A stretch of DNA of 64,000 bases from Hypanus sabinus (lineage: Eukaryota): assembly GCF_030144855.1 (NCBI RefSeq), contig NC_082731.1:26288001-26352000 (forward strand), read 5' to 3'. Under the pieces are notes generated by a model that was given only the letters and a program-made list of their open reading frames with translations, did no database searches and was not told where the DNA came from. A program made the position numbers and the translations under genes. This document shows, in pieces, positions 37,043 through 57,048 of the stretch; the stretch's first letter is position 1; every line of letters starts with the position of its first letter.

Positions 37043-37104
37043 TGTATCACATAGGCAATAAAAAGTTATTATTCAGGAGTAGGACCAATATACTATGGAA
37101 CCCA
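37043..37104 (+). pseudogene. TRAJ: Pseudo-J: YHIGNKKLLFRSRTNILWNP
   Basis: Heptamer tactttg 37036-37042, FRSR, wrong splice phase at the donor 37105. Confidence 0.78.
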
Positions 37105-37973
37105 GTAAGTGTTCATATTTGTCTAAACTGAAGAAGGAAGTGTAAAGTTGGGACATAACATGTTTCTAAATATGATTTGGTGCAATCTCTAACCCCTAAA
37201 CAAATTAATTAGCTTTCAGTATGGTTGTAGGTCAATTACTTTCGGGTAAATTTGTTCCTTCTCTAAATGTTTACCTTCTCAAAGACTATTTGAAAATATA
37301 ACTGGTTAACGCACATTTTTATTGAAAGCTTTTTATGTTTAGATGGACGGGTGGGGAGAAAAACAGAGTTAATAGAAAGGCAAAAAGAAATATATGTCAC
37401 ATAGATAAGATGGCAGAGTAGGGAAACTGGCAACGTCACGACATCTCCAGAGATCCGATTTCCATCCTCGTCTACACAGTAGAATGTGTGCAGCTGGCCT
37501 GATTTTCCTACGACCCTGTAGATATTCTCCGCCTTCCTTGGACGGGTAATTGGTTTCTGTAAATTTCCCTCAGTGAGTGCTGGAATCTGAAAGGAGTTCA
37601 TGAAAATCTGGGAAGAAAAAAATAGTTAGGGTACAATGCTGTAATTGGGTACAGTAAGGTCGGTGACGACTGAATGGACCTGAGGGCCACTATCGGTGCT
37701 GTAAGATCATAGAATTAGTACAAATGAGCGTCTGATGGTCAGCACGCCTTGCTAGGTTGAAAGGTCTGTTTCCAAGATAAATCTTTCTGTGACTGAGCTA
37801 ATATGTCCATTCGTAGATTGATATACACCTTAGCAAATAAAGGACAATAATGTATCTGCAAGTATTTACATTAGTTATATTTGTGGTTTATAATGCAACA
37901 GGGCAGATATTATATTTTTCCATAAAGTGTCCACTACTGGATCCGGGTTATTGTAATGCAATCTAACAGTGTG

Positions 37974-38030
37974 TGAATAACAACTTACCATTAACCTTTG
38001 GACCAGGCACCAGACTGACTGTAATTCCAA
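37974..38030 (+). CDS. TRAJ: J segment, intact: NNNLPLTFGPGTRLTVIP
   Basis: Nonamer ggttattgt 37946-37954, 12-bp spacer, cagtgtg 37967-37973; donor at 38031. Confidence 0.92.
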
Positions 38031-38193
38031 GTAAGTCACCAGTACTTGCTGTTAAAATGGAAGGTTTATGAGCATAATTAGCTCCAAAGTGCCTGAATTT
38101 AGGATTCGCTACCTTAACCAGGTTGTTGTTTTTTTTTAGGTATTATAATGGGTTTGTCAGCTGGTATTTATTATATAATGTTCAGTTACTATA

Positions 38194-38226
38194 TGAAGGA
38201 TGAAATGAGCAACAAATTAATGTTTT
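38194..38226 (+). pseudogene. TRAJ: 5' half-J (EMSNKLMF) truncated next to a LINE insertion
   Basis: RSS region gtatttattat...gttcagt tactata and agcaacaaattaa match the intact J at 44999; 3' half absent. Confidence 0.65.
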
Positions 38227-38261
38227 TTTATATTTTATATTAAATTTGAAGTTAATACATA

Positions 38262-39575
38262 TTCTTAAGGATAGGATCTACGAGCATTTGGAGAAGTACG
38301 GTCTACTCATGGATAGTTAACACGGCTTTGTGAAGGGAAGATCGTGCCTCACGAGCCTGATTGAGATTTTTAAAGTGGTAACAAAAGAGATTGATGAGGT
38401 TAGGGCAGTGGATGTGGCCTACATGGACTTTAGCGAGGCATTTGACAAGGCCCATCATGAGAGACTCATCCAGAAAGTCATGAGGCATGAGATAAGTGGA
38501 ACCTTGGCTGTTTGGATAAAAAAAAATGGCTTAAAGGAAGAAAACAGAGGGCAGTTGTGGAATGAAAATATTCTGCCTGGAGGTCGGTGACTAGTGGAGT
38601 GCCGCAGGGATCTGTCCCGGGACCCCTGCTATTTGTGATTTTTATAAATGACCTGGATGTAGAGGTGGAAGGATGGGTGAGTAAGTTTATGGATGACACG
38701 AAGATTGGAGGAGTTGTGGATGGTTTCAGGTTGTCGAAGATTACAAGAGGATATAGACAGGCTGTGGAGCTGGGCAGAAAAATAACAAATGGAGTTCAAT
38801 CCGGATAAGTGTGAGGTGATGCATTTTCGAAGGACAAACCAGAAGACCGAGTATAGGATTAATGGTCAGTTACTTAAGAGTGCGGATGAACAGAGGGACC
38901 TTGGGTTTCAAATCCATATATCCCTCAAGGTCGCTGCACAGGTTGATAGGGTAGTTAAGAAGGCCTATGGAATGCTATGCTTCATTAACAGAGGGATTGA
39001 GTTCAAGAGTAGAGAGATCATGTTGCAACTCTACAAATCTCTGGTGAGACCACACTTAGAGTATGTTCATTTCTGGTCACCTCATTATGGGAAGGATGTG
39101 GAAGCTATGGAGAGGGTGCAGAGGAGATTTACCAGGATGTTGCCTGGTTTGGAGAACAAGTCATATTAAGCAAGGTTAGTAGAGCTGGGACTTTTCTCTC
39201 TGGAGCGTAGAAGAATGAGAGGGGACTTGATAGAGGTCTACAAGATTATGAGAGGCATAGATAGGGTGTTTCCCAGGACACCAATAGCAAACACCAGAGG
39301 GCATAAATACAAAATTAAGGGAGAATAGTTTATGGGAGACATCTGGGGTAAGTTTTTTACTCAGAGGGTTGTGTGTTCCTGGAATGATTTGCCAGGGATA
39401 GTGGTTGAGGCTAAAACAATAGGGGTATTTAAGAGCCTCTTGGACAGGAACATAGATGTATGAAAAATAGAGGGTTCGAGGGTAGTGTGGGTTTAGTTCT
39501 TTTTTAAGGATTATATGTGTCGGCACAACATGGAAGGCTGAAGGGCCTGTACTGTGCTGTAGTGTTCTATAGCTC
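38262..39575 (+). mobile_element. 5'-truncated CR1-like LINE with frameshifts
   Basis: ORFs 38330-38590 (KGRSCLTSLIE, DFSEAFDK), 38587-38808 (SGVPQGS, FINDLD, FMDD) and 38789-39169 (IEFKSREIMLQLYKSLVRPHLEY); CR1 tail gtactgtgctgtagtgttctat ~39550-39570. Confidence 0.92.
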
Positions 39576-40628
39576 TAATATAGAAGTTCCAGTGCAGAGA
39601 ATGAGCTGCTTCAGCTCAACATATTCACTCCAATAATGAGCTTTCTACCTACCCATTTTTCAATGGATCCCCATAGAACCTGATGAATTGGCAATTCAAG
39701 TTGTCATCTACATAATTCTGAAATATTGTGCGTACTGCTTCCACCACTTTGGGCAGTGTTTTCCAGATCCCAACCATCCTCTAGATGAAAGCTACCTCTA
39801 TGAATAACCATAAAAGCTCCAATCCTCTATAAACCTATGTCCTCTATCTTTAAGTAGCTTTGTAATAGCCAAATTTTGGTGCTGTAGTTAGTACCTCAAA
39901 ATTGTGTACACCTTCAACAGGACACCCTCAACTTCGCCAGGTCCAAAAGACACAAACTGGGGCTATCAGTTATAGCTGAAACTCTCCAACCTGGGCAACA
40001 GCCTGATGAAGCTTTTTTGGCACTCTCCAACTCAATCAAATCCATCGTCTAGACTGGCTGCAGAATATTCCAAGAGTGACCAAACTAATCGTTTGTAAAT
40101 ATGTTCCATAACTTTCCTGCAGTTATCTGGCTGGTGAAGACAAGCACTCTGTATGCTTGCTTCAACAGTTTCTCCTTTTGAAAACCATTTCCAGATGTCA
40201 CGGGCTAGGGAAAAGATGTCCACTATAGCCTACATTCTAGATAAACAGGCAACCAGGCAGACCGATGAATCGAGATTCAGATGAATAGACGAACTGAAAA
40301 ATGCAGAGTCAGAGACGGGTACGGGAAAACAAATAGGCTGATGAATGGTAAAATGTAGATAGACAGATGGATAGCTGAATAGATAAATGTTAGAATGGAT
40401 CTGTTTCTGTTTTGTAACTTTTTGTGACTGGGCAAATACGTCCATTAATAAATTCATGCATGCATTAGTAAATAGAAGTAAAATAATGTATCAGCAGTTG
40501 CTTACATAAGTTGCATTTGTGGTTTATAATGAAGCAGAGCAAGCATTATAATTAAGTGGACTCACTAATATATCCCACAAAGGGTCCCTTAGTGCCTCCG
40601 GGTTATTGTAATGTTATCAAACAGTGTG

Positions 40629-40685
40629 TGAATAGCAACTTACCATTAACCTTTGGATCGGGAACTAGACTGACTGTGATTCCAA
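40629..40685 (+). CDS. TRAJ: J segment, intact: NSNLPLTFGSGTRLTVIP
   Basis: Nonamer ggttattgt 40601-40609, 12-bp spacer, cagtgtg 40622-40628; donor at 40686. Confidence 0.92.
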
Positions 40686-40846
40686 GTAAGTCACCCTCAG
40701 CTGCTCTTAACATAGACGGTTTATGAGCGTAATCAACATACATATGCCTGAATTTGGGATTTGCTGGAACAAACGGACTGGGTTCTTTTTGAAACACTAT
40801 AATGGGTTAGTTAGCAGATATTTGTGTAAGAATTTCTTTTACTGTG

Positions 40847-40909
40847 TAAGTTATGGAATGGACAGTAAAGTAATGTTTAGAAGTGGAACAAGACTTTCTG
40901 TGTAACCCA
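40847..40909 (+). pseudogene. TRAJ: Pseudo-J: SYGMDSKVMFRSGTRLSV*P
   Basis: RSS plausible (tatttgtgt, 12-bp spacer, tactgtg 40840-40846) but FRSG, stop codon and donor gaaagc. Confidence 0.8.
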
Positions 40910-42139
40910 GAAAGCTAAATGACTGAGTTTCTCTTCCTCAGTGAAGGAAATGCAGGACATATTATTAATTATGCCGAGAATGGGAGCCACATATGCCAAG
41001 GCAGGCAAAATATGCAACTAATTCACAGAATGTTGTTATATAAAAGATAGAGTGCAAGGAATGCGGCCTTTAAGCCCATCATATTCACGCCAATCATCAG
41101 CTTTCTACCTACCCAATTACGAATTAATCGCCTATACACTTTGAGCATTTGGCGATTCACGTTATCCTCTACATAATTCTTAAATAACGCGCGTACTGAT
41201 CCCAACCATCTCCTGAGTAAAAACAAACCCTCGCTGGATAACCCTAAGAGCTCTAATCTTTCCCTAAACCTATGTCTTCTAGCTTTAAGTACCTTTGTCA
41301 TGAACTTTTGGTGACCAGCTCCAAAAGAAACAAACTGACGCGATCAATCATAATTGAAACGCCCCAACCTGGGCGACAAGCTTACGAGTCTTTCATGCAC
41401 ACTCTCCAACTCAACCAAGTCCTTCTTATAGTGAGGCGTCCCCAGCATTGCATAATATTCCAACAGTGACCAAAACAATCTTTTGAAATTTGTTCCATAA
41501 CCTTCCTACTCTTGTATTCTATTGCCTGGCGAGTGAAGTCAAGTATCCTGTGTGACTCCTTCAACACTTCCTTTTTTTCAAAACCATTTTCACATCTCAC
41601 AGACTAGGAAAGCAAATGTCCACCATAACCTATAATCTAGTTGGACAGACAGATAGGCAAACCGATTAATCGAGATTCAGACGAATGAACGAAGTGAAAG
41701 TTCCACAGACAAAGAGATTCTGATGCATGGTAAAATACAGATAGATAGATCGATAGATGGATAGCTAGGTAAGTACACGGACAGACAACATAGACTGTTA
41801 GGTGCTGACTCTTGTCAGGCAGATTGTCAGAAATTGCATGTATGGATTGTTACTATTATATCTCAAATTCAGTGCTCTGCCACTTATTGCCAGATAATGA
41901 TCTCTATGCAAAAAGCACCAAGAGGCAGTGTATGGCATTCTGATGGTGGATCGTCATGACTGTATTGAGCAACAGAGGAGGACAAAATGGTTGATTCCCG
42001 CCTCTGAGCCTTCTTCTAGAATACAATTCCCCTCCAAAATGAGAAGCATGAACATCATATCTATGTGCACAGTATCTCATGAGCCAAACTCCACATCTGG
42101 CCATAGGGCCAAGTTTTTGGGTGGGCGTCTCACACTGTG

Positions 42140-42196
42140 CGAATAATAACATCAAAGTAATATTTGGATCGGGTACCAGACTCGATGTAACTCCAA
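42140..42196 (+). CDS. TRAJ: J segment, intact: NNNIKVIFGSGTRLDVTP
   Basis: Nonamer agtttttgg 42112-42120, 12-bp spacer, cactgtg 42133-42139; donor at 42197. Confidence 0.91.
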
Positions 42197-42977
42197 GTAA
42201 GTCACCCTTGTTCACCAATCACTTGGTCCATTATTCCCGGTTGGTATTATTGCCGGCTAGAGATATTTTCTTTCTGGTCTTTCTGTGGGCTTGCTGGCGG
42301 GATTGACAGTATCTGATATTGACTCGGATACTGTTCGATTCTGAAGCTGACAGGTTTTATAATAGTTAGTAGTGCGACCAAGCACCTTGTACAAGCTGTT
42401 GAAAGGCTAGATTTAAGATCAATTAGAAGAATGATAGGTGATTTTATTGAAACGTTTAGATTTCGAAAATATTTGACAGTTAGATAAGGAGATGTTTCCA
42501 CTAGTTGAAGACTTGTGAATGAAGGACAAACAAGGGAAGTGATCTGTTATTTGAAACTGTGGATTTAGAGATTTGTTCTTTCAGGGATGAGTGAATCTTT
42601 GGAAGTCCACACCACAACCGATTGTCAGAGGTGGACCATCGGTGATATTGAAGGAGTAAGTAGATGAATGTCTGTGTGACTGAAAAATTCAAGCTTATGA
42701 TGATCTCGTACAACAGAGGAGATGGGACCTGGGAAAAATTAGTTCTTGTTGAATAATGGAGCAGGTCTGAGTGACAGAGTAGCCTACTGTCCTTAAATGT
42801 TTCTTTTTTAACCAGAATAAAACAAATACTGCAGCTCGAAGATTTTTTAAAAAAAGAAACTCCTGGTAGGTTTCAGTCCTGGGGCCATCGCAATCTACAG
42901 CCATCATTACCAACACAAAGGTTTACATTTCTATAGCGCCAAGCACACGTGTTTTTGTGAGGCTGCCCACTACTGTG

Positions 42978-43034
42978 TGGGTGACAACTACCGACTAATA
43001 TTTGGATTAGGAACCAGCCTGACTGTAACTCCAC
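42978..43034 (+). CDS. TRAJ: J segment, intact: GDNYRLIFGLGTSLTVTP
   Basis: Nonamer tgtttttgt 42950-42958, 12-bp spacer, tactgtg 42971-42977; donor at 43035. Confidence 0.92.
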
Positions 43035-43864
43035 GTAAGTCGACCTTGCTTGTATTGGGTGTAATATATCCCTGAGTGAACTTCGTAAGTTTAAAAATCA
43101 AGAAAATCTGGTTGAATTGTGATAGGCAAGAAGTAGACTCCAAGGTGAAACATAAATATATACACTGCTTCTCTGTTTGAAAGTAAATAGGAATATTTGT
43201 CCTATTGCTGCTGCGAGCTGATGGCATTTAAATATTAATGTACTTAGATACTAAAATTCAATCAGAATTTTTACCATTACCCATTTCCTCCTATCATGAA
43301 GTCCATTTTGCATCCAATTAGCAAAAGCGCTGTGACTCTGATCTGCATCATTCTGAATCATGCTACACGGGTCTTTGTGGTAGGACCATCGGTAATACCT
43401 TACTGAGGTTCGTAGCTTCATAGGTCTTCTTAGTATTCTCCTTAAGAAAATGCAATCAAATTAGTGAGGCAGAATTTGCCACACACTATACCATGCGAAC
43501 TGCCCTTATGTATCGTTGTTTTGCCAAATCTACAAAATTCCTGTTCCTTACAGTTCACCGACGTTTCACTGACTTTGGGGAGTTATCTGTCAAAATGCGT
43601 ACCAGGCCATATTCTCTGAACTATTATATAGCCAACCCACCACCCGAACCGCTATCATTCGTGTCTTTATCCCTGTCGATTACTGATCAGCAGTGCTAAT
43701 ACAAGACCTTGCCCACATCCCCTAGATTCAGATACAGACGACATCATTAATAAAACTTACTTAGTATTTTTAATAATTAGAGTCAATTAACGAGGAAGGC
43801 ATTGGAAATGACCCTTTCAAAATAAAATGAAACGGATTCATTTTAAAGAGGGTCAAGTACTTTG

Positions 43865-43926
43865 TGAATCATACAGGTAATAGCAAGTTAATATCCGGGA
43901 GTAGGACTAAAGTGAGTATAGAAACA
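43865..43926 (+). pseudogene. TRAJ: Pseudo-J: NHTGNSKLISGSRTKVSIET
   Basis: Heptamer tactttg 43858-43864, FGXG changed to SGSR, phase-0 donor at 43927. Confidence 0.78.
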
Positions 43927-44786
43927 GTAAGTGCTCATATTTGTAAAGTTGGGACAGAAAATATTTGAAAATACGATTAGATCGGGTAGCTTTCAATCTG
44001 GTTGCAGGTCAATTTACTTCAGACAAAATATATTCCTTTTCCATGATTATGATTAGTTGAAAGTAAAATTGCATAACGGACTCTTTTTATTGAAATGTCT
44101 TAATTTTACGTATAAATGGAGGGGTGAAGACAAAGAGTGTTAATGGAAAGACAAAAAGAGATGGGACATAGATGGGACAGCAGAGTGAAGCAGCAGGTAA
44201 CGCCACGACAGCCCTAGAGATCCGCATTTCATCCTCGGCTCCAGAGCTGAATGTGTACAGTTGGCCTGATTTTCCTGCGACCTTGTAGATTTTTTCTGAC
44301 TACTTTCCTAGTTTCAATGGCTAACAGCTTGGAAGGATAATGGTAAATTGCCCCAGTGTGTGTGTATGTATGCAGGAATCTGAAAAGAGTTGTTGAAAAT
44401 TTGGGAAGCGAGAAGTAGTTAGGGTAGGATTTCTGTAATTGCGTGCAAGAGCTTCAGTGCAGACCAACTGGGCCTAAAAGCCATCTCAGTGATGTGGGAT
44501 TTTATTATTAGTGCAAGTAGGTGTTTGGTGGTCAGCACGATTCGATGGGCTGAAGGGTCTGTTTCTCAGATGTATCTTTCTGTGGCTGAGCTAATATGTC
44601 CATTTATAGATTGATACATACTTTAACAAATAGAAGTAAAATAATGTATCCGCGAATACTTACATTAGTTATATTTATAGTTTATAATGCAGCAGTGCAG
44701 GCGTTATATTTAAGGCCACTTATCAATATTTCTCATAAAGTGCCCTTTACTGGATCCGGTTTATTGTAATGTTATCTAACAGTGTG

Positions 44787-44843
44787 TGAGTACCAACCTA
44801 CCATTAACCTTTGGACCAGGAACCAGAGTGACTGTGATTCCAA
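44787..44843 (+). CDS. TRAJ: J segment, intact: STNLPLTFGPGTRVTVIP
   Basis: Nonamer gtttattgt 44759-44767, 12-bp spacer, cagtgtg 44780-44786; donor at 44844. Confidence 0.91.
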
Positions 44844-44998
44844 GTAAGTCACCCTAACTTGCTCTTAACATGGAATGTTTATGAGCATAATTACTGTGCC
44901 TGAATTTAGGATTCACTGCGATAACCAGACTGTTTTATTTTTGGAAAATTATAATGGGGGGTCAGCGTGTATTTATTGTATGAAGTTCAGTTACTGTG

Positions 44999-45057
44999 TG
45001 ATGTAACGAGCAACAAATTAACGTTTGGAAGTGGGACAAAACTCGTTGTGGAACCCA
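44999..45057 (+). CDS. TRAJ: J segment, intact: DVTSNKLTFGSGTKLVVEP
   Basis: Nonamer atttattgt 44971-44979, 12-bp spacer, tactgtg 44992-44998; donor at 45058; 59 nt long. Confidence 0.88.
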
Positions 45058-46300
45058 GTAAGTAAAATGGTAGAGATTCTCTTCATCAGAAAAGGAAACA
45101 TAGGACATGTTATAGATTAACTCATAGAATTTGAGGGTAATGTTACTGTTACAGTGCACAGCCCAACATATCCACGCCAATAATGAGCTTTCTACCTACC
45201 CATTTTTCGAAGGAACACATAGACTTTGATGATTTGGCGATTCCGGTTGTCTACATAATTCTGAAATAATGTGCGTTCTGCTTCCACCACTTTGGACAGT
45301 GCGTTCTCGATACCAACCATCCTGTAGTTGAAATATCCCTCTATGAATAACCATGAAAGTTCCAATCCTCTCTAAACCTATGTCCTTTATCGTTACGTAC
45401 CTTTGCCCAGAACTAACTTTTGCTGCTGAAGTTAGCACCAGACAACGGTGTACACCTTAACCAGGACACTCTCACCTTCGCCAGATTCAAGGGAAACAAA
45501 CTGAGACTATCAATTATAGCTGAAACTCTCCAACCTAGGCATCAGCCTGATAAGTCTTTTCTGGATACTCTGCAACACCATCAAATCCCTCCTATAGAGT
45601 GCTGCATTATATTCTGAGAGTGACCAAACCAATTGTTTGTAATTTTGTTCCATAACTTTCCTGCTGGTATCTGGCTGGCGAAGAGAAGTATTCTGTATGC
45701 CTCCTTCAACACTTTCCCCTTCTTTTGAAAACCATTTTCAGATGTCACGGACTAGGAAAAAAAAATGTCCACTATAGCCTAGTTAGACAGACAAACGAGC
45801 AGAGCGATGAATCGAGATTCAAATGAATAGCCGAAATGAAAGATAGATTCACAGACGTGTGTGGAAAAACAGACAGGCTGATGAATGGTAAAATGTGGAT
45901 AGACGGATGGATAGCTGAATGATTAAAAAGATAAAATGGAAAGATAGATAAATAGATAACAATCTATACTTATCTATTATTAGCCTTAATAGATTTTTTA
46001 AAAGATGTTTTAGCCAATCGTGTACTCATCAGCTAATTATATCTATGCATAAAGCACCGAGAAGTACAGGGCGAGTTGTATATGTTATTGGGATGGTGGA
46101 TCAACAATGTTATATTGACTGGTAGAACCAGCTCAAAGGGCCAAACGAGCGACTCTCGCCCATGTATTTTCATTTCTTTGTTCGATGCACAATTCCCTTC
46201 CAAAATGTGAAGCGTGAGTATCATGTCAATGTGCACAGTATCCCACGGGCCACACGCCACAGTTAACCGTAGAGATTTTGCGTGGATGTGTCACACTGTG

Positions 46301-46357
46301 TGAAGAATGACTTGAAAATAATATTTGGGCCTGGAACTGAACTGACTATAACTCCAA
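46301..46357 (+). CDS. TRAJ: J segment, intact: KNDLKIIFGPGTELTITP
   Basis: Nonamer agattttgc 46273-46281, 12-bp spacer, cactgtg 46294-46300; donor at 46358. Confidence 0.89.
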
Positions 46358-46819
46358 GTAAGTCAGCCTTGCTCATCAATCATTTGATCCGTTGTTCCCT
46401 CCTGGAAAATAGAAATATTGACAGAAAGGGCCCTCTGTTGACCTGTTGGTGCGATTGGCACCGTAAAGGTATCCTTTTAAGGAATCAGGGACTGTGTGTA
46501 CCTTTAGCCGTCAGCACATCAATACTTGCTACATAGATCATGCTTCTTGTACAAACAAGTAAGTCTTGAAAATAGGTTATAAAAATATATCAGAAGGATG
46601 ATAGCTGATCTTATTTAACCGAGTAAGATTCAGAGAAAGTTTGGAGAATGGGTGAGGAGGATTTCCACCAACTGAAGAACATATGGGGGGAGGGATCTTT
46701 TATTTGAAATTGAGGGTTCCAGTGATTTTTTCCTTCCCTGAATTGCATCATTTATTTCTTCCTTCCGGGTGCTTGTGAGTGTTGGACTAACAACGGGTGA
46801 AGTTCTGCATGATCAGAAA

Positions 46820-47900
46820 ATAGAAAGAGGTGGCTAAAGGGATTCTGCAGACATTAGTGATAATCTTTCCAGAATTTATGGAGTATGGTTCTAGATGACT
46901 GTAAAATTGCCAATGTCACTCCACTCCTCAAAAGGGTAGAGAGGCAGAAGAAATGAAATGAAGTCCTGTTATTTTGACCTCAGTGGTTGGGAAGATGTTT
47001 GCGTTGATAGTTAAAGCTGTGGTTTCAGTGTACGTGGAGCCACATGTGAAAATAGGCTGTAGTCAGCATGGTTTCCTTAAGGGAAAATCTTTCCTAATAA
47101 ATCTGCTGAAATTCTTTAAAGAATGAGCAAGCAGGATAGACATCGAGGTACAGGTGGATGTTGTACATTTGGATTTTCAGAAGGCCTTTGACAAGGTGCC
47201 ACGCTTGAGGCTCTTTAGCAAGTTAAGAGACCATGGTATTACAGGAAAGATACTAGCATGGATAGAGCATTGGATGATTGTCAGGAAGTAAAGAGTGGGA
47301 ATAAAGGAAGCCTTTTCTGGTTTGCTGCAGGTGAATAGTAATGTTCCATAAGGATCTGTTTTGGGACCGCTTCTTTTTACGTTATATGTTAATAACTTGG
47401 ATGACAAAGTTGGTGGCTTTGAGGCCAGGTTTGTGGATGATGCGAAGGTAGGTAGAGGGACATACAGTTTTGAAGAATCAGAGATGCTCCGCAAGGATTT
47501 AGACAAATTAGGACAATGGCCACGGAGTTGAAAATGAAACACAGTGTCTGGAAGTGCATGGTCATGCACTTTGGTAGAAGAAATAAAAACGTGTGCTCTA
47601 CATCGAGAGAAAATTCAAAAACCTGAGGTGCAAAGTGAGTCCTCCTGCAGGATTCCCCGAAGGATTACTTGTAGGTTGATTCCGATGGTGAGGAAGGTAA
47701 CTGCAATGTTAGAATTCATTTCGAGTGTGCTAGAATAAAAAGCAAGGATATTATATTGACGCTTTGTCAGGCACTCACTTGGAGTATTATGACCGGTTTT
47801 GGCCCCTCATCTATGAAAGTATATGCTGACGTTGGATAGGGTACAGGAAAATTATTCGGGGCATTTCATGGCTCCGGAGCAGACTCGGTGAGCCAAATGA
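46820..47900 (+). mobile_element. Decayed CR1-like LINE RT fragment
   Basis: attgccaatgtcactccactc, cagcatggtttccttaagggaaaatc, ttcagaaggcctttgacaaggtgccac: IANVTPL / QHGFLKGK / FQKAFDKVP motifs, with stops. Confidence 0.8.
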
Positions 47901-48159
47901 CTGAATTCCGCTCCTATCTTAAGATAGAAGGCTGTGGAGAACTTTTACAGTGAGGAGTTGAAACCTGGGACAAATCAGTTTAAGTTCAAGACAGGCTTGA
48001 TGGTTTAATCCTGCACCCTAAATGTTTTTGTGCTGTCACAAAGGCCACAGATGCTGGAAACCTGAGATAAAAGATAGGAGTAAAGTTATAAAGTCCTGTT
48101 AAAGGCTTTCATTTCTGGAACACTTCATAGACGTTTTGGTGAGGTTTTCGCCACAGGTT

Positions 48160-48215
48160 TAGTAAAAGCCGGCGAATAATATTTGGATCTGGATTCAGCT
48201 TGACTCTAGCTCCAC
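48160..48215 (+). pseudogene. TRAJ: Open J with defective heptamer: ...KSRRIIFGSGFSLTLAP
   Basis: Nonamer-like cgttttggt 48132-48140, but no GTG-ending heptamer; FGSG frame open; donor at 48216. Confidence 0.7.
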
Positions 48216-48251
48216 GTAAGTAGTGATTTTGTAAGGCTGTCCAGTACTGTG

Positions 48252-48308
48252 TGGGTAGCAGCACCAAAATAACATTTGGATCTGGCACGATTCTGACTGT
48301 AACTCCGC
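48252..48308 (+). CDS. TRAJ: 3'-most intact J segment: GSSTKITFGSGTILTVTP
   Basis: Nonamer tgattttgt 48224-48232, 12-bp spacer, tactgtg 48245-48251; donor at 48309. Confidence 0.91.
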
Positions 48309-48619
48309 GTAAGTAGACCTTTATTTTGTTTGATACAATTTATCTCAGAGAGAAAATCCTGTTATAAATCAACGAAAACAAGCTAAATTGGGTCGGGGGG
48401 CATTAGGGTTAGAATCCAGGGTGAAAAGCTGAAATGATATACTGCTTGTCTGTTTGCATCGTCATTTGCTGTTCCCGACAGACACCATTTTAGTTCCATT
48501 TAAATATTCATATACCACCTTCCAATCAAACAAAAATCTTTCCAGCTTTACCCTCTGTCTCCTATCCTGAATTTCACTTTCGATGCAATTAGCTGAACAG
48601 ACTCTCATCTACCTTAGCC

Positions 48620-49364: not shown

Positions 49365-50105
49365 TCTGTCTGGAAGCATAGTGAATCTCTGAAATTTTCT
49401 ACCCTAGAAAGAAGATGAAAGGCAGGTCATTTGATATATTCATAGATTCGAGGAAATTCATCTTCGGCCTTCCTCGTCAAGTCCGAACACGATGCCTCGC
49501 AAACATAAGGCTATTGAGCTGCATTTGCCGCATATCCCTCTAAACCCTTCATATTCATGTATTTGATTATGTTTTAATTTGTAATGATACCAGCTCCTAA
49601 CACCTCTCCTAGCAGCACATTTACTATACCCATTACACCCTGTCTAAATAATAACACCCCTCAGATAACGTGGAGATGGATAAATACTAAGGCCAAGGAA
49701 CTGGCTGTTTAGGGAAAAGGCACAGAAAAGGTGTTGAGTTCAGATATGATCATAATTAATAGTAGAAAGGCTTGACGAGTCTACTCCTGCTCTTATTTCG
49801 CTTTTATTGTGTTATGAAATTCTCTCCTACATCTTTTATATTGCTCAACGAACTTGCTTGTTTGCACTAATCATCCATTCACTTTTTTTTTTCCTGATCC
49901 AAACTTCAACAATGTTTGTCATCCAAGGTTCCATAATTTTGGACGAAAGGAAGATTTACGTTGCACAGTAGGTAGAAAGAGGCGGGGTTAATGAACGTAG
50001 GTGGGTACTTGATACTTTACATGGACAGAATGGGTCAAAGGGCCTGTTTCTCCGCTGTGTGGATCCTATGGCTTAGAAAGAGGCAGTGTCGAAAAATTTG
50101 TAATT

Positions 50106-50161
50106 TGAATTATATAAACAGATAATATTTGAACGAGGGACTAAAAGAAGTATAGGAGCCA
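50106..50161 (+). pseudogene. TRAJ: Decayed pseudo-J in the J-C interval: ELYKQIIFERGTKRSIGA
   Basis: ataatatttgaacgagggactaaa (IIFERGTK), phase-1 GT at 50162; RSS collapsed. Confidence 0.5.
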
Positions 50162-50972
50162 GTGATTGCGTTGTGAGTTATTATGCTTTCAGCTATTAGT
50201 AAAACAAAATACACAGATTTTTCAGCAATTAATTTAATAAATAAAAAATGCACAGATTTCTCAGCAATGAGTTTAATAGACATGTAATCTTCATCGGCTA
50301 AATAGTTGGTAAAGCAATTCGCCTAATTCTCATCCCAAATTAAAGGCAACTTAATATATCAGACTTTTAAAAATTGTTACGTTTGCTATAAGTTTGTAAT
50401 TAAGTGTTAACTCTAATATTAAAACTATAACAGTAAATGGTGTTTCCAATAAACCACAATATCACTAAAAAGACAAAGAACAATTAGAAAGAGAAGCAAA
50501 CTAATGAACAAACTAGAAGATAAACAGATACATAGGGCGCTGTTGGATAGAAAGACACAGACAGACGAGATATGGTTGAAATGTATGTAGAGAGTAATGG
50601 AAGTTGAGAGGCACATATAAGATAAATAATTACTGACACGTACAGAGAAGGGGAATCAGAGAGAAGTAGACAGAAGAGAAAATGACTGATATCAATAGAT
50701 AGAATAAAGTAAGTTGGTAGATAGATAGAGCACTGTGGGAGAGTGCAAGGGTGAGAGAGGGCAAGTATAAGAGTGCGGTGGGAGAAATTCATGAAATCTA
50801 AGCTATAGTTAGTCTGACTTTCAGATAACATGCTCTAGTACATGGTCTATTTAGCAGAAAATTGGCCGCAATCCCGTGACATTCCAGAGAGTGTAAGTGG
50901 GAATGTGATGCCTCAATGCACTCTTCGTGAACCCTGTAAGACGCATTTGCTACGCATACAATCAGGCCACTG

Positions 50973-51040
50973 AGTTTATGTGTGGACAAGTGATGCTGTG
51001 TGAACGATACGACTTACATAGACTATCACTCCATGTGAGT
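50973..51040 (+). pseudogene. TRAJ: FGXG-less J-like segment (51001-51034) with intact 12-RSS and splice donor
   Basis: Nonamer agtttatgt 50973-50981, spacer gtggacaagtga (12 bp), heptamer tgctgtg 50994-51000, 34-nt segment ending ACT ATC ACT CCA T (TITP), gtgagt at 51035; TAG at 51019-51021 in the C-compatible frame. Confidence 0.8.
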
Positions 51041-51693
51041 CCGCCTTGTTTGGAAATCAGTGAATGGCAAGTCTGGTTCATCGATTGAGCTAGTTTCCTC
51101 GTTTAGGAAAGACTGGGGACTCCTGATGCATGTGGTATTGAATGTTTCTATGGGCTGGACTGTTAGATCGAAGAACTTGGCAAGGACCCCCCGCCCCCCC
51201 CCCCCGCTCCCCTGTTCAATGCTTCAATCAGTTCCCTACCAAATGCTATGCTTTCTGGATTTTGCCTTGCCTAAAGTCAAGACTACTGTGAAACCTTCAC
51301 CCTTACCGAGCTGTCCAGAAGGATTTATTCAGAAGGGAAAGATGTCCGGCAGGAAGGAAACATTAGTGGGTATTGGACGAAGAAGGGAGTTTGTAGAGAG
51401 ACTGTGGACCAAGGGTTTCCAAAATGTTATGCCATGGACTCCTACCGTTAACCCCAGATTGGAAGATTCTACTGTAGACAGATCCCAACAACCAGAAGCT
51501 TCTTCACCAAATACTCTTTATTCAGCTTCACCTGACCGTAGCTTTCACTGACATATTCTCGACTTTGAGACATCACCGGCTCTAAACCTTGGTACTCTCT
51601 CCCGGACAGCATGGTAGCAGCACATTCAGCAGGGCGACGTTGCTCACTTCCTGACCGCCAGGCCACCATGTGTGGTGTAGGGAATCCAATCCA

Positions 51694-51968
51694 GTGGCGC
51701 AGCAGGTACAGCCGCTGCCTCGCCGTTCCAGCAACCTAGGTTCGATCCCGACTTTCAGGTCTTTTCCACAAGTTTCCACCAGCAAACAGCTTCCGGGTTA
51801 GTCACTGCAGGTTGATCATAAGGTGTAGGTGAGAGTCTTATTGTTTTGTCGGGAAGAATTTTAATGTGGATCCAATAAAATGGAATCAGTCTAGAATTCG
51901 TCTAAACATGTGCTTGTTGGGCCCAATATGTAAAAAGGGTTGTTTCCCTGTCGATTGCTTCAATGACT
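51694..51968 (+). mobile_element. tRNA-derived SINE (HE1-like)
   Basis: Pol III A box gtggcgcagcagg (51694) and B box ggttcgatccc (51739), followed by a LINE-type tail (gggttgtttccctgtc). Confidence 0.75.
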
Positions 51969-52609
51969 AACAAAAGTTAGAGATGAGCATTATTCATGTT
52001 AATTGGAAGAGCGTGTGTAAAAAAAAAAGTTCCCATGAGATATAATCTCCACTTCCTACACTCTTCCTACAACTAAAACCACGAGTTCAGTCATGCAGCA
52101 TAAAACAGCAAGTTCAGGACTTAAGAGTATGCCAGCTATCAGACACCCAAAATTCCCGTCGCACCCAGCACCCATTTAATGGAGCATAGTATGTTCTTTT
52201 AATTACATGGTTAAATTCTGAGTTCGCATTCTGGTTAGAGGACATTTCAGCTTTATATGTTTTTGTGTTCCGAATAGCATTTATAAAGCAGGGAATCTAA
52301 TTACAGTGTATCTGCTGAATTTCAAAAACGGGGAATCAACGGACAGATAAATGTGCAGGGGCAGGTGGGATTGAGAGAAATGCAGGCAAGCAGAGACAAT
52401 ACATTAATAAAGGGCGTGTAATGTAAATATCACTTTAATATATTATTCATGCATACGTAGTGCCATTGTATATGAGAAAGTAGCATGAAACTCTGCATAC
52501 AATAACTACTAGGAATGCAAACTGATAGTTTGGTTTGGTGCTTGATTCACCACAACTTCAACTAAGTCAAACTTGATCCAGTTTGTGTTTTCTCGCCGTT
52601 TGAAATGTT

Positions 52610-52870
52610 AACAGGAAATGCTGGAAAAACTCGGCAGATAGGGCAGTATCCGTGGGGAGACGAACCGTTGGCATTACAAGTCAAAGACCCTTTGCACGGA
52701 ACCAAGAAATAGTAAAACCAAGTTAGTTTTCACTGCTACTGCAAATTAATTTGCTATCCCTTTTATCCCGTTCTGACCCAAAAGCCCCAGAACTGAAATG
52801 TTAACTCCGTTTCCCTCTCTACCGATGCTGCCTGATCTGCTGAGGATTTTCTTCATCTTCCGTTTTTTTT
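52610..52870 (+). mobile_element. Short interspersed repeat fragment of the gatgctgcctgacctgctgag family (many other copies, e.g. ~6110-6330, ~12290-12510, ~17900-18110, ~18990-19170)
   Basis: Recurrent motifs aaatgctggaaaaactc...cag and accgatgctgcctgatctgctgag across the window. Confidence 0.6.
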
Positions 52871-53129
52871 TTTTTTGCAGATCCCAAGCGTCTGCCACCG
52901 CTTCAATTAACTTTACTGAGATGGCTCTAAAAAGGAGTAAATTAGATTCAGATTCAGATTCAGTTTATTGTCATTTAGAAACCACAATTGCAATGCAGTT
53001 AAAAAATGAGACATTGTTCCTCCAGAATGATATCACAAAAGCACATGATAGGTCCCGATAAATTGTGACAAGAGAGAGTTATTATTGAATTGAATACGAT
53101 CAAACAAGTCCAGACATTGACTTGTTTGA

Positions 53130-53555
53130 CGGCTCTAGGCCTCTATTCAGACGAACGGGAAGAGGAGGGGAGGGCTCATCGAAACCTGGGGAAAGTTGAA
53201 AGGCCACGACAGAGTGTATGTGGAGGGAATATTCCTTATGGTGGCGGAGTTTCAGACCAGAGGGCACAGACTCAGAATACAGGGACGTCCGTTTAGATGA
53301 GAAATGATCATGCAAGTCTTTAGCCAGAGCGTGGTAAATTTATGGAATTCGCTGCCACTGGCAGCTATGGAAGCCAAGTCATTGGGTATATTTAAAGAAG
53401 ATGTTGATATATCCTTGATTAGTTGGAGCATAAAGGGATACGAGGAGACGGCAGGGGATACGGATTGAGTGGGATGTGGATCAGCCATGATGAAATGACG
53501 GAGCAGTCTAAATGGACAAATGGCCTAATTCTGCTCCTACATCCTATATCCTATT
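53130..53555 (+). mobile_element. CR1-like LINE 3' fragment
   Basis: gagggcacagactcagaata, ttagccagagcgtggtaaatttatggaattc, gatcagccatgatgaaatg...ggcctaattctgctcctac tail. Confidence 0.8.
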
Positions 53556-54960
53556 CTCCTGGTCTTACTGTCTGAACCTATTGCATCATTACTGCTTCTT
53601 ATGGCTCTCCCACCTCTCCCTCCTGTCTGGTTACGAGGCCCGGTTACCACACACCACCTGACCCCATCCCGTGTACTACGGTAAACCTCTAGAATTTTCT
53701 TACAAGGAGGGCAGTGAGCCCTCACTCCTCATTCTTTTAGCTCATTCGAAGCCATGGCCAAAGAGACAAGGCAAATGAATGAAGGAAACTGAATGTGGCC
53801 ATAGGACAAGGCACTTTGGCCGACGATGTTTAAGTTGACTATGACGCCAAATTATACTAAAGCCTGAACATAATCCATACCCCTCTGTTCTTCTGCGTGT
53901 TGTCCCTCTATCCAAATACGTCTCCAAATACCCCTGTCACTATATCTGTAAAAGCAAATTCCCCCAAAATTTCCTTCAAACATTCCCCCTTTTACCCTTA
54001 AACTATGGTCTTCTGTCTGTAACATTTCCAGCCTGGGGTGGATGTTCTGCTCTATCTATGCCTCTCAGAATTTTTTATAAAAAACACTTGTCAGTTCAAC
54101 CCCCAGCATCCGACGCTTCTGGCAAATCAGCCCAACCTCGCCTTACAGCCAGTCCCAGCGTCTTGTAAGGTTGCAACGTTCCAGATCTGATATTACAAGA
54201 AACGACCTATGAAGGCAAGAGAGTGACTGTAAGATACAGGAGCGGGATTCGCCCATCCATGCCATTGAGTCCGCTCCAATTGTGTCAATTGTGGCTGAAT
54301 TGTTCAACCTCATTCATCCATCCTCAGCTCTTAACACTCTTCCCAATCCGAATCTATTAACCTCCACATTAAATCCACCCAGTTGTTCTCCGCCGCCCTT
54401 CTGAACAACGAATTCCACTGATTCTGCATCCTCAGGCTGATGAAATTCCTCCTGACCTCAGTTCTAAAGTAACGCTGTTTTTCCTCTTAGCCGGTGCCCT
54501 CAGATCCTCAACTCCCGCTCTAATGGAAGCATCCCCTCCAAGGCATCCAGGCCTTATGCCTTCTGAAGCCATATGGCTTATACATAGCCATGTCCACTTG
54601 TGCTGCCACTTTCAGAGAGCTAGAAACCAAAGACTAAATGTCCCCCAGTTCATCAACTGTGGTGGCATGCGATGTATGCCCTACCCTATTTGACTTCCCA
54701 AAAAGCACTACGTTTCACGTATTCGATGGTCTATCCACACTCGGTGGGCCGGAAAGCCTGTGCTGTATCTCTGTATGTCCAGGACAGGGGAGGAAAAGGG
54801 ATCTGAGATATACTGTATAGTAAACACGGACGCAGGGTCGAATGGCCTGTTTCTAAGCTGTGATTGTTCTGTCAGTCAGCCGTTCGGCCCGGGATGCGCG
54901 GAAGTACGAGCAAGACCACTAACCAAGGAGTTCACCTTGTCTTCTTCTTTTTCTCTGCAG

Positions 54961-55242
54961 AACGGAACATTGCACAGAAGCCATCCGTCTATTTCCTCCG
55001 ACCCTCTGCGCAGGAAGCTATCGACAAGCGGGTGCCAGCTGCCTGCCTTGCCACTGACTACTTACCCAATAAGTACACTCTCAACATATCTGCAGGCAGT
55101 TATTCCGAGAAAAGATCTGAAAAAGATGCTCAAATCTCCATCCAGGACAAAAGTTACAGCCTGTTGGCTTTCCTTACCGCGCCATGGTCCAGTGTGTCGT
55201 CTCAAATGAGCTGCCGGTTCAACGAGACCGATTACGTGGACA
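54961..55242 (+). CDS. TRAC: TCR alpha constant exon 1 (Ig C domain): xRNIAQKPSVYFLRPS...AACLATDYLP...YSLLAFLTAPWSSVSSQMSCRFNETDYVD
   Basis: Polypyrimidine tract + cag acceptor ending 54960; phase 1 matches the J donors; 282 nt; PSVY motif, two Cys, Trp shortly before the second Cys as in mammalian C-alpha; donor gtacgt at 55243. Confidence 0.92.
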
Positions 55243-55734
55243 GTACGTTGATCGTTTAACACGAAAACTCGACTCAACCGGCATATGTTAATCTGTTTAA
55301 AAATTGCACTGAAATATTTCAGTAAATCTGGCGGGTTTCAAGGGCGGGAAGGAACCAGGGACCTAGTGAGTGGGAAAGATTCGCGGGAAGTAGGGATCTA
55401 GTGAGTGGAATTTGCAAACGTCATCTACCGAGCAAGAGCCCAAAACATCAGTAGTTCAGGGGAAACGGCTAGGAAATTATCTAACTGGTTATAGAATCAC
55501 AAGGGCGGTCACGTCTCATCTATACTTCCCAGGTCTTTCCACAGCTGTGTTTGGGATCCTTCCCATAAACTCAACCACACACTCAGGGGATAAATTCAGT
55601 TCCTCCCCGATTTAAAGTGTATACTTCCTGCTCTTTTTTCCCCAGACCAGGAAAGTTTCGCTCAGCAAATACCCTTGTAATAAAACTATTAAGCAAACAC
55701 TAGTAACTCTCCACATAACTTGCTTATCCCGCCG

Positions 55735-56070
55735 ACTCCAGTATTGAACTCACCTGTTCATTCCTCAACCTTGAATCGACCTGCTCATCTGGCAAGCACA
55801 GTGTTGACCCGCTTTCCTCGTTCCAGCTCCACTGCTCACCCAATCTATTTGTTCCCCGATACCACTGCTGACCCAAACTTTACATTCAGCAACCACAGTG
55901 CTGATGCAACCATTTCACCCGAAATCCCACTGTTGATCCAACATGGTCATTCCCCAAATTCATTGCTACCCCCAACATACTCATTCCTCAACGCCACTAT
56001 CGAACTAACCTGTTCATTCCCCAACTCTAGCTTTGACAGGACCTGCTCATTCACCTACTCCAGTGCGCTC
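55735..56070 (+). repeat. Degenerate ~33-bp tandem array (consensus about acctgctcattcccaaccccactgttgaccc)
   Basis: cactgttgaccc-like cores at 55797, 55829, 55862, 55893, 55927. Confidence 0.75.
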
Positions 56071-56148
56071 CTTACCCTGTCTGATCAGTGTGGCATTTGA
56101 TGACTGTCCATGGACTAGACTCATGAAGTTACTTTTTATCTCTTTCAG

Positions 56149-56196
56149 AGGGTGGCCAGGGGGTTTGCATTGAACTTGATGACGATGATGAAGACG
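56149..56196 (+). CDS. TRAC: TCR alpha constant exon 2 (connecting peptide): xGGQGVCIELDDDDED
   Basis: tttttatctctttcag acceptor, 48 nt, phase 1-1, single Cys for the interchain disulfide, donor gtaagt at 56197. Confidence 0.88.
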
Positions 56197-56354
56197 GTAA
56201 GTGCTTGCTATAAATATTCATTATAATCTTCACGCTTCAAGGAATTTTGGGGGTGCCCATTGCAATCCACTGTATCCCGTATTATTTTCAGAAACTATAA
56301 ATAGAAGCTAAAGGAAGGACGTTTAGAAGAATTACTAGGGTTGTGTATGAGCAA

Positions 56355-56550
56355 TTATATGGGTCAACAGTCGGGTTGGGAAATAAGCAGGCTGAATCAA
56401 CAGTGCGATTGGAGAGTGAAAAGCTCGGATCCATTGTGGGGTTGGGGACTGGGCCGCATGACTCAACAGTTTGGTTAGGAAGTAAACAGATTGGGTCAAG
56501 AGTTTGCTTCAGAATGGGCAAGTTGGGTCAATAATAGGGTTGGGTAGGTA
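56355..56550 (-). repeat. Second ~33-bp array, inverted relative to 55735-56070
   Basis: gggtcaacag-like cores at 56361, 56394, 56427, 56460, 56493, 56525; the reverse complement agcctgcttatttcccaacccgactgttgaccc matches the left-array unit. Confidence 0.78.
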
Positions 56551-56940
56551 GTTCTATTCAAATATGTTGCGCGGGACTTTGATAGAGAGTGAGGATTGGA
56601 GCAGAGATACCCTTTGTGGAGTTCGTCCCAACACTATGTAGCGGGCACAAATTTCAGGAAATCTGCCTTTTAAGAAGGGAAGGAGAATGTGTTCTCCTGG
56701 AGGGGAAAAGTAAGTCTGTGGACCTGACACCAGACAGCTGTGGAGATCAAGTCATTGGACATATCCGAAGCCATGATGAGCGTGTGATTTGACTGCAGTG
56801 TAGGATAGAGAGTGGTAGGCAATAGGTAGGAAGATGCAGATATGGCTAAATCAATCCACAGATTCCTGTTCAGTTTTCTCGTATACCCAAGGGCAACTTT
56901 GAATGCCATCTCAGTGTTCCTCTCTTTTCTCCCCCGGTAG

Positions 56941-57048
56941 AACGAGACGTACAAGAGCTCTCACTAACAGTCTTCGGATTGAGGATTCTGTTCTTCAAAA
57001 GCGTTATCTTCAACATCTTGATGTCTGTTCGTGTTTGGATATCATAAG
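56941..57048 (+). CDS. TRAC: TCR alpha constant exon 3 (TM + cytoplasmic): xRDVQELSLTVFGLRILFFKSVIFNILMSVRVWIS*
   Basis: Pyrimidine tract + tag acceptor at 56940; TM carries the alpha/delta-type Arg and Lys (LRILFFK) and FN; TAA at 57045-57047; donor gtgagg at 57049. Confidence 0.93.

What the first reader, a model, noticed from the sequence alone, without database searches (positions are those of the whole stretch)
50973..51040. Last RSS before C-alpha is a recombination-competent-looking dead-end J: possible allele-inactivating element
Seen: a 12-RSS whose nonamer (agtttatgt) and heptamer (tgctgtg) equal those of the intact J at 5617, an exact 12-bp spacer, then only 34 nt and a strong gtgagt donor in phase 1 (...ACT ATC ACT CCA T). 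The FGXG core is missing (~23 nt shorter than a 57-nt J) and a TAG sits in the only frame compatible with C-alpha. Its spacer and ends resemble the 35304/42140/46301 J family. It lies 2.7 kb beyond the last functional J. Established: the Ig-kappa intron RSS/Kde and human deltaRec-psiJalpha use non-coding RSS elements to delete or inactivate alleles. Inference: V joining here would delete every functional J and end secondary rearrangement on that allele. It may instead be an ordinary pseudo-J whose RSS has not yet decayed; the remnant at 50106 suggests a fourth, decayed cassette copy.
Basis: partly seen in the sequence, partly recalled or inferred. Interest (0 to 1): 0.72.

Follow-up and report, generated by a model that had tools for sequence, protein, structure and literature searches.

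The report
Dead J-alpha segment with intact signal
The last "cut here" signal before the T-cell receptor alpha constant gene of the Atlantic stingray belongs to a broken J segment that can only give useless joins; it looks like an ordinary, recently broken gene piece, not a purpose-built switch.

Summary
At 50973-51040 lie a 12-RSS (agtttatgt / 12 bp / tgctgtg), 34 nt of J-derived coding sequence and a gtgagt donor. This is the last usable RSS before C-alpha exon 1 (54961-55242) of Hypanus sabinus.

The 34 nt fit a 57-nt J that lost 23 nt in one deletion, which removed FGXG. Both remaining parts are open in the original J frame (NDTTYI ... LTITP). The frameshift itself creates the TAG. I add a second lesion: the last base is T, so splicing to C-alpha (aa...) gives TAA. 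All 37 intact-RSS Js scored end in A, C or G.

The heptamer and nonamer score within the functional range. The full RSS ties the weakest functional J.

The window holds about 17 other J remnants. One (40819) also has a dead coding part behind an intact RSS. Two further remnants (50106, 52518) flank the candidate, so the 3' end of the array is decaying. Human TRAJ1/TRAJ2 and mouse J1 are likewise non-functional.

Best reading: an ordinary, probably young pseudo-J. V joins to it would be terminal and non-productive, but nothing indicates selection for that.

The parts
50973..50981 (+). RSS nonamer agtttatgt
   Evidence: Identical to the nonamer of the intact J at 5589. In canonical orientation it reads ACATAAACT, 7/9 to ACAAAAACC, with the A-tract kept.
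50982..50993 (+). 12-bp RSS spacer gtggacaagtga
   Evidence: Exact 12 bp. Matches 7-8 of 12 positions in the gtgg-type spacers of the Js at 29179, 35276, 42112 and 46273.
50994..51000 (+). RSS heptamer tgctgtg (CACAGCA in canonical orientation)
   Evidence: The cleavage-proximal CAC is intact. The same heptamer occurs in the functional Js at 5589 and 20753. Heptamer plus nonamer score 18.3 bits; the functional range is 11.0-25.0.
51001..51020 (+). 5' part of the J coding remnant: TG + AAC GAT ACG ACT TAC ATA (N D T T Y I in the original J frame)
   Evidence: It starts with the TG(AA) shared by most Js of the array and is open in the J frame. The breakpoint at about 51020/51021 is inferred from the 57-nt J layout.
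51021..51034 (+). 3' part of the J coding remnant: G ACT ATC ACT CCA T ((L) T I T P, then a terminal T)
   Evidence: It matches 12/14 positions of the tail of J 46273 and 11/14 of J 42950. The terminal T never occurs in the 37 intact Js scored (A 32, C 3, G 2). T plus the 'aa' of C exon 1 gives TAA.
51035..51040 (+). splice donor gtgagt
   Evidence: Consensus donor, the same hexamer as the J at 1592. The other Js have gtaagt, apart from the RSS-defective J at 22170, which has gtaagc.
51035..54960 (+). would-be J-C intron (3926 nt), rich in interspersed repeats
   Evidence: No further + strand RSS. One decayed J remnant lies inside it.
54961..55242 (+). C-alpha exon 1 (acceptor cag|aa, donor a|gtacgt)
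   Evidence: 100% identical to Hypanus sabinus LOC132381329 products.
48224..48314 (+). last intact J (RSS 48224-48251, coding 48252-48308, donor gtaagt), ITFGSGTILTVTP
50078..50172 (+). decayed J remnant (IIFERGTK...), RSS lost
52478..52572 (+). decayed J remnant (KLIVWFGA*...), RSS lost, donor ctaagt
   Evidence: 65-68% identical to the coding parts of the Js at 42112 and 46273.

Best explanation
The element is an ordinary TRAJ pseudogene of the Atlantic stingray. It was a 57-nt J-alpha segment of the '...T(V/I)TP' subgroup, at or near the 3' end of the J array. One 23-nt internal deletion inactivated it by removing FGXG and shifting the frame, which creates the TAG. One substitution of the last base then made the J-C junction codon TAA. 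The 12-RSS, the TG coding start and the splice donor are still within the range of working Js, most likely because little time has passed since inactivation.

Inferred, not shown: RAG can still cut here at some low rate late in the series of secondary V-J rearrangements. Such a join is always non-productive, its V-psiJ-C transcript carries premature stops, and the allele has no J left. That outcome is a by-product of decay at the rarely used C-proximal end of the array, not a selected inactivation device.
For: - Anatomy: the 34 nt fit TG + 6 open codons, a 23-nt gap, then 14 nt of open tail. This is exactly a 57-nt J minus FGXG.
- Few lesions: the remnant tail plus donor scores 12.1 bits, above two intact Js, and most of the penalty comes from the terminal T.
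- RSS quality: heptamer plus nonamer score 18.3 bits, 10th lowest of 37. The full 28-mer scores 15.3 bits, equal to the weakest functional J at 15.29.
- Pseudo-Js are common here: an nhmmer J profile finds about 17 extra J remnants in 64 kb.
- One of them, 40819, also has an intact tactgtg RSS (15.6 bits) with FRSG, a TAA and a lost donor.
- The converse case also exists: J 22170 has intact coding but a spacer-deleted RSS.
- The 3' zone at 48.6-54.9 kb contains only dead J relics: 50078-50172, the candidate, and 52478-52572.
- Literature: human TRAJ1 and TRAJ2, next to TRAC, are 'ORF' class while cattle and sheep TRAJ1/2 are functional, so this is lineage-specific decay (PMC8945572, PMC7824213). 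In mouse, 17 of 60 Js are pseudogenes, including J1 and J3 (PMC2194109). The mouse pseudogene Traj61 rearranges at the DNA level (PMC12822386).
Against: - Among the pseudo-J relics of the window the candidate has the best-kept RSS. Most others score below 9 bits for heptamer plus nonamer.
- Its flanks show no similarity to any other J's flanks, so its age cannot be measured from paralogues. 'Young' rests only on the small number of lesions.
- No read data or orthologue was available to exclude purifying selection on the RSS.
Confidence: 0.82

Rival explanations
1. Selected terminal or allele-retiring element. The RSS is kept by selection so that a V join here removes all J-alphas and closes the allele to further secondary rearrangement. 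This would be a functional analogue of Kde or deltaRec-psiJalpha.
For: - It is the last RSS before C-alpha.
- The RSS lies in the functional range while the coding part is dead three times over: no FGXG, a TAG, and a TAA at the junction.
- It has the best-preserved RSS among about 17 pseudo-J relics.
Against: - Only two mutational events separate it from a working J, so no selection is needed to explain RSS survival.
- 40819 shows the same state in mid-array, where no such role is possible.
- The full RSS score is at the very bottom of the functional range.
- Geometry: the join removes no constant gene, no candidate enhancer downstream of C-alpha and no competing locus, unlike Kde and deltaRec-psiJalpha (PMC8945572).
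- From general knowledge, TCR-alpha rearrangement is ended by positive selection or cell death, so a retiring element has no evident benefit.
- Terminal J decay is not conserved in mammals (PMC7824213).
Confidence: 0.05
2. Inert relic. The RSS looks fine on paper but is not used in vivo. Its score is weak, it lies beyond the zone reached before thymocytes die, or chromatin is closed. This would resemble mouse J1 and J3, which are listed as non-rearranging pseudogenes.
For: - The full 28-mer PWM score ties the lowest functional J.
- The heptamer deviates at positions 6-7.
- Mouse J1 and J3 do not rearrange (PMC2194109).
- No RefSeq product of LOC132381329 starts from this exon, although a model with a TAA junction would not be reported as a protein anyway.
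Against: - Two functional Js in the window (5589, 20753) carry the same heptamer, and 5589 also carries the same nonamer.
- CAC, the 12-bp spacer and the TG coding flank are intact.
- The mouse pseudogene Traj61 does rearrange (PMC12822386).
Confidence: 0.3
3. Allele-specific or assembly-specific defect. The 23-nt deletion is a polymorphism of the sequenced haplotype, or an assembly error, and other haplotypes carry a working J here, as with IMGT 'F or P' genes.
For: - Both halves are open in the J frame, and the deletion is a single clean event.
- IMGT lists TRAJ genes whose alleles differ in functionality, such as human TRAJ8 (PMC8945572).
Against: - The terminal T (TAA junction) is an independent second lesion.
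- There are no repeats or N runs near the site.
- This could not be checked, because reads were not available.
Confidence: 0.06

Closest known systems
TRAJ pseudogenes and ORFs next to TRAC in mammals (human TRAJ1 and TRAJ2 'ORF'; mouse J1 and J3 pseudogenes)
   Same: A non-functional J segment at the C-proximal end of a long J-alpha array, still laid out as RSS, J and donor. Its status is lineage-specific: cattle and sheep TRAJ1/2 are functional (PMC8945572, PMC7824213, PMC2194109).
   Different: Here the defect is a 23-nt deletion of the FGXG core plus a stop at the splice junction. The mouse examples are reported not to rearrange. Whether this one does is unknown.
Rearranging pseudo-J: mouse Traj61 / human psiJalpha (TRAJ61)
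   Same: A J-like element with a working 12-RSS and a useless coding part. Joins to it are seen in DNA and are nearly invisible in RNA (PMC12822386).
   Different: psiJalpha lies at the 5' end of the J array. With deltaRec it deletes the TRD locus, leaving all J-alphas available (PMC8945572, PMC2198968). The stingray element lies at the 3' end, would delete the J-alphas themselves, and has no known dedicated partner.
Ig-kappa deleting element (Kde/RS) with the J-C intron RSS
   Same: An RSS without a usable coding segment, whose use ends productive expression from that allele (general knowledge; KRECs in PMC3666889).
   Different: Kde lies downstream of C-kappa and removes the constant gene and enhancers. 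The candidate lies upstream of C-alpha and removes neither, and it is plainly a decayed J rather than an isolated signal.
Pseudo-J at 40819-40914 in the same window
   Same: An intact heptamer (tactgtg), a 12-bp spacer and a dead coding part.
   Different: It lies in mid-array and has a functional paralogue at 44971. Its lesions are point changes plus a lost donor, rather than a deletion.

Membership tests
TRAJ pseudogene (IMGT class P) | J-derived sequence with the RSS, J-region and donor layout, inside the TRAJ cluster upstream of TRAC | tested here: met
   A 12-RSS, a TG start, a T-I-T-P tail and a gtgagt donor. It lies 2.7 kb after the last intact J and 3.9 kb before C-alpha exon 1 of Hypanus sabinus.
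TRAJ pseudogene (IMGT class P) | Stop codon, frameshift or loss of the FGXG motif in the J-region | tested here: met
   FGXG is absent through a 23-nt deletion, there is a TAG in the C-compatible frame, and the J-C junction codon is TAA.
Functional TRAJ | FGXG motif at a fixed 34 nt from the donor, open frame into C-alpha | tested here: not met
   All 38 FGXG Js have the F codon 34 nt before the donor; the candidate has no F-G-X-G.
Recombination-competent 12-RSS | Heptamer CAC at the coding border, 12 +/- 1 bp spacer, A-rich nonamer; score within the range of used RSSs | tested here: met
   CACAGCA-12-ACATAAACT. Heptamer plus nonamer score 18.3 bits against a functional range of 11.0-25.0. The full 28-mer scores 15.3 bits against a functional minimum of 15.29. 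This is sequence-level only.
Recombination-competent 12-RSS | Coding and signal joints observed in lymphocyte DNA | not testable with these tools
The runs found include no run on record as RNA.
Locus-deleting or allele-inactivating RSS elements (Kde/RS, deltaRec-psiJalpha) | Recombination removes a constant gene, an enhancer or a competing locus | tested here: not met
   Geometry. C-alpha exons (54961-57044) lie downstream and stay in place. Only J-alphas and whatever lies upstream are removed, as with any V-J-alpha join.
Locus-deleting or allele-inactivating RSS elements (Kde/RS, deltaRec-psiJalpha) | RSS conserved across species beyond the neutral rate | not testable with these tools
   The C-alpha protein of Hemitrygon akajei was found (80% identity), but its DNA could not be fetched.
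Locus-deleting or allele-inactivating RSS elements (Kde/RS, deltaRec-psiJalpha) | Dedicated partner RSS and preferential, stage-specific use | not tested
   V segments and any 23-RSS partner lie outside the window.

The most novel reading that the evidence does not exclude
The terminal RSS is kept by selection in rays as a 'last stop' of the J-alpha array. A thymocyte allele that has run through all Js is closed by a guaranteed non-productive join (no FGXG, TAG, TAA junction). This would limit further RAG cutting or dual-TCR expression. If true, it would be a new kind of allele-retiring element in an early-branching jawed vertebrate.
Probability: 0.04. Interest if true: 0.6.

Novelty: new member of a known kind. 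Interest (0 to 1): 0.15.

Why it matters
As it stands, this is a small annotation point. The stingray TRAJ array ends in a zone of decayed Js, and the last RSS belongs to a pseudo-J that can only give non-productive joins. This is useful for anyone annotating the Hypanus sabinus TRA locus or interpreting repertoire data: V-psiJ joins would appear in DNA but hardly in RNA. It also shows that decay at the C-proximal end of the J-alpha array, known from human and mouse, occurs in a cartilaginous fish too. Only if the RSS proved to be conserved across rays would it bear on how secondary TCR-alpha rearrangement is terminated.

Tried and rejected
No joint, splice or polymorphism test was therefore possible.
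- Orthologue test. The C-alpha exon 1 search found Hemitrygon akajei proteins. Isoform X2 is not on record.
- Paralogue dating. blastn and local alignment of the candidate's flanks against all J flanks gave scores within the shuffled null. The age of the candidate relative to the cassette duplications could therefore not be estimated.
- Family assignment. The link to the 35276/42112/46273 group is not distinguishable from the 36128/42950/48224 group or from 1592.
- RefSeq isoforms of LOC132381329. None starts in the candidate. This is uninformative, because a TAA junction precludes a protein model.
- Chance origin was rejected on the PWM scan.
- The published mouse RIC model was not available, so a PWM from this window's own Js was used instead.
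The junction codon was read from the two exon ends.

Full report
**What the window is.** The + strand carries a long array of TCR-alpha J segments. A six-frame scan finds 38 segments with F/W-G-X-G followed exactly 34 nt later by a GT donor. They run from 147 to 48275 (F-codon positions), and each is preceded by a 12-RSS. C-alpha exon 1 lies at 54961-55242, with acceptor cag|aa and donor a|gtacgt. Its translation, searched by reference on its own, is 100% identical to products of Hypanus sabinus LOC132381329, whose isoform X1 is named 'T cell receptor alpha chain-like'. It is 80% identical to a Hemitrygon akajei protein. The hinge exon and the transmembrane exon lie at about 56145 and 56940-57044. 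The window is therefore the 3' part of the Atlantic stingray TRAJ-TRAC region.

**Check of the observation.**
- nonamer agtttatgt, 50973-50981
- 12-bp spacer, 50982-50993
- heptamer tgctgtg, 50994-51000
- 34 nt of coding sequence, 51001-51034
- donor gtgagt, 51035

The nonamer and heptamer are identical to those of the intact J with RSS at 5589-5616. The C-compatible frame reads tga acg ata cga ctt aca TAG act atc act cca t.

The element is not a chance match. I built a log-odds matrix from the RSSs of 36 Js and scanned both strands of the window. The only + strand sites within 3 bits of the candidate that are not known Js are two other pseudo-Js (33777, 40819) and a 2-nt-shifted copy of a known RSS. 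The - strand has one weak hit at 53677-53650, driven by its spacer and with a poor nonamer. There is no RSS-scoring site on the + strand between 51041 and 54960, so 'last RSS before C-alpha' holds.

**Anatomy.** The 34 nt fit a standard 57-nt J of this array with one 23-nt internal deletion. The first part is TG plus six codons that are open in the normal J frame: AAC GAT ACG ACT TAC ATA, reading N D T T Y I. This compares with NDNFLVIFG in J 35276. After the gap comes G ACT ATC ACT CCA T, reading (L) T I T P, the tail typical of the 3' group of Js. The missing stretch is one codon, then FGXG, T, X and two bases of the L codon. Because 23 is not a multiple of three, the 5' part is shifted relative to C-alpha, and the TAG is made by that shift at the deletion junction. 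The missing FGXG and the TAG are therefore one event.

The last base of the remnant is T, and C-alpha exon 1 begins with 'aa', so the junction codon would be TAA. Among 37 intact Js the last base is A in 32, C in 3 and G in 2, and never T. I read this from the two exon ends. In total, no V joined here in any frame can produce a chain with a C-alpha domain.

**RSS quality.**
- Heptamer plus nonamer score 18.3 bits, 10th lowest of 37. The leave-one-out range for functional Js is 11.0-25.0.
- The full 28-mer scores 15.3 bits, equal to the weakest functional J (35276, 15.29). The spacer part of this score is inflated for the duplicated J families.
- The cleavage-proximal CAC, the exact 12-bp spacing, the nonamer A-tract and the TG coding flank are all intact.
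- The TG start is the conserved microhomology motif of cartilaginous-fish J-alphas (PMC10322711).
- Two functional Js (5589, 20753) use the same tgctgtg heptamer.

At the sequence level the RSS is plausible but weak.

**Context: the array is full of dead Js.** An nhmmer profile of the 36 Js finds about 17 further J-like remnants. Most have lost the RSS as well, with heptamers such as cactttg, cattgta, ttgtctg and tgcaatg, and heptamer-plus-nonamer scores below 9 bits. There are intermediate states:
- 40819-40914 keeps tactgtg-12-nonamer (15.6 bits) behind a coding part with FRSG, an in-frame TAA and a lost donor.
- 22170-22258 has a perfect coding part but a shortened spacer.
- 48131 has a broken heptamer.

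An intact RSS in front of a dead J is therefore not unique to the terminal position.

The interval from 33.4 to 48.6 kb consists of cassette copies that align over their whole length at 65-78% identity. Beyond 48.6 kb that homology stops. The remaining 6.3 kb up to C-alpha contains only relics: 50078-50172 (IIFERGTK..., RSS gone), the candidate, and 52478-52572 (KLIVWFGA*, RSS gone, donor ctaagt). The candidate is thus the last RSS but not the last J-derived element. The C-proximal end of the array is a zone of decay.

**Family and 'fourth cassette'.** This claim is only weakly supported.
- The candidate matches J 46273 at 19/28 RSS positions and 12/14 tail positions. It matches the 42950 tail at 11/14, and its best local score is to J 1592.
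- All of these are close to the shuffled maximum, and its flanks resemble no other J's flanks.
- The 50106 remnant has a spacer-like stretch gaggcagtgtcg that matches the 35276 spacer at 8/12. The candidate lies about 900 nt after it.
- In cassettes A and C the next J (the ITFGLG type) lies 852 and 838 nt after the VIFG-type J.

A decayed extra cassette copy is therefore plausible, but which member the candidate corresponds to is open.

**Interpretation.** The facts fit a J that worked until fairly recently and was knocked out by a single deletion. It has since acquired one more disabling substitution, and its RSS, TG start and donor have not had time to decay. With only one or two substitutions visible in about 40 nt, the expected number of hits in the 16 heptamer and nonamer positions is below one. 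Survival of the RSS therefore needs no selection (inference).

The join is non-productive, transcripts carry premature stops, and no J remains downstream. This assumes deletional joining from upstream Vs. Earlier scan notes place V segments 1-6 Mb upstream, which I did not test. Nothing suggests that this outcome is the reason the element exists.

**Comparison with known systems.**
- In human, the two Js next to TRAC (TRAJ2, TRAJ1) are 'ORF' class, not functional (PMC8945572). In cattle and sheep the same two are functional (PMC7824213, Table 4).
- In mouse, 17 of 60 Js are pseudogenes, and J1 and J3 are listed as non-rearranging (PMC2194109).
- The mouse pseudogene Traj61 rearranges extensively in DNA yet is almost invisible by 5'RACE (PMC12822386).

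Decay of terminal Js, and pseudo-Js with working RSSs, are thus both known.

deltaRec-psiJalpha excises the TRD cluster from the 5' side and leaves every J-alpha available (PMC8945572, PMC2198968). Kde removes C-kappa. A join at 51001 removes no constant gene and no competing locus, so the defining feature of that class is not met.

**What could not be done.**
The ten runs listed by the look-up of sequencing runs remain unexamined.
- DNA of the Hemitrygon akajei locus could not be fetched, so RSS conservation is untested.

The verdict therefore rests on anatomy, on the state of the other Js in the window and on the literature.

**Verdict.** The functional interpretation is not supported. This is most likely an ordinary, probably young, terminal pseudo-J (confidence about 0.8). 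The selected 'allele-retiring' reading keeps about 4-5% probability. Interest is low.

Noticed in passing
window 40819-40914: A pseudo-J with an intact 12-RSS (tatttgtgt-12-tactgtg) but with FRSG instead of FGSG, an in-frame TAA before the final P codon and a lost donor (agaaag). It is a paralogue of the functional J at 44971 and of the more decayed copies at 33777 and about 38160.
   Followed up: partly
window 22170-22258: A J with a perfect coding part (WELIFGTGTRVIVEP) and a gtaagc donor, but with an RSS spacer shortened by about 6 nt. It is coding-intact and probably unable to recombine, the mirror image of the finding.
   Followed up: partly
window 37015-37104: The 3' end of this pseudo-J (heptamer tactttg) is ATGGAACCCA|gtaagt at 37095. 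This is the only site in the window encoding M-E-P-K plus a donor, and it matches the N-terminus of RefSeq isoform X4 (XP_059806682.1, MEPK-RNIAQ...). The gene model seems to splice a pseudo-J to C-alpha.
   Followed up: partly
window 52478-52572: A decayed J remnant inside the J-C intron (KLIVWFGA*, donor ctaagt, no RSS), 65-68% identical to the coding parts of the Js at 42112 and 46273.
   Followed up: partly
window 33400-48600: The 3' third of the J array is built from cassette copies (about 33.4-37.9, 37.9-40.6 partial, 40.6-44.7 and 44.7-48.6 kb). They are alignable end to end at 65-78% identity, and each carries both functional and dead Js. The pseudo-Js at 37015 and 43837 share the same tactttg heptamer defect, so they were dead before the duplication.
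   Followed up: partly
window 53650-53677 (- strand): An RSS-like 28-mer on the opposite strand (agtacacgg / gatggggtcagg / tggtgtg, 13.3 bits). The score comes from the spacer and heptamer and the nonamer is poor, so this is probably chance.
   Followed up: no
window-wide (RefSeq isoforms X1, X2, X3, X5): The N-terminal exons of LOC132381329 isoforms X1 (…TLIFGSGTKLTVKP), X2 (MGVMDRKVK), X3 (MLTVTP) and X5 (MP) are not encoded in the window, so the J array and the gene's 5' exons extend upstream of it. Isoform X1 reads through an unrearranged RSS (HALW), which indicates a germline J transcript.
   Followed up: no
window 48131-48221: A J-like segment immediately before the last intact J. It reads FGSGFSLTLAP (T replaced by F after FGSG) and has a broken heptamer (cacaggt). 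It is a tandem pseudo-copy 93 nt upstream of J 48224.
   Followed up: no
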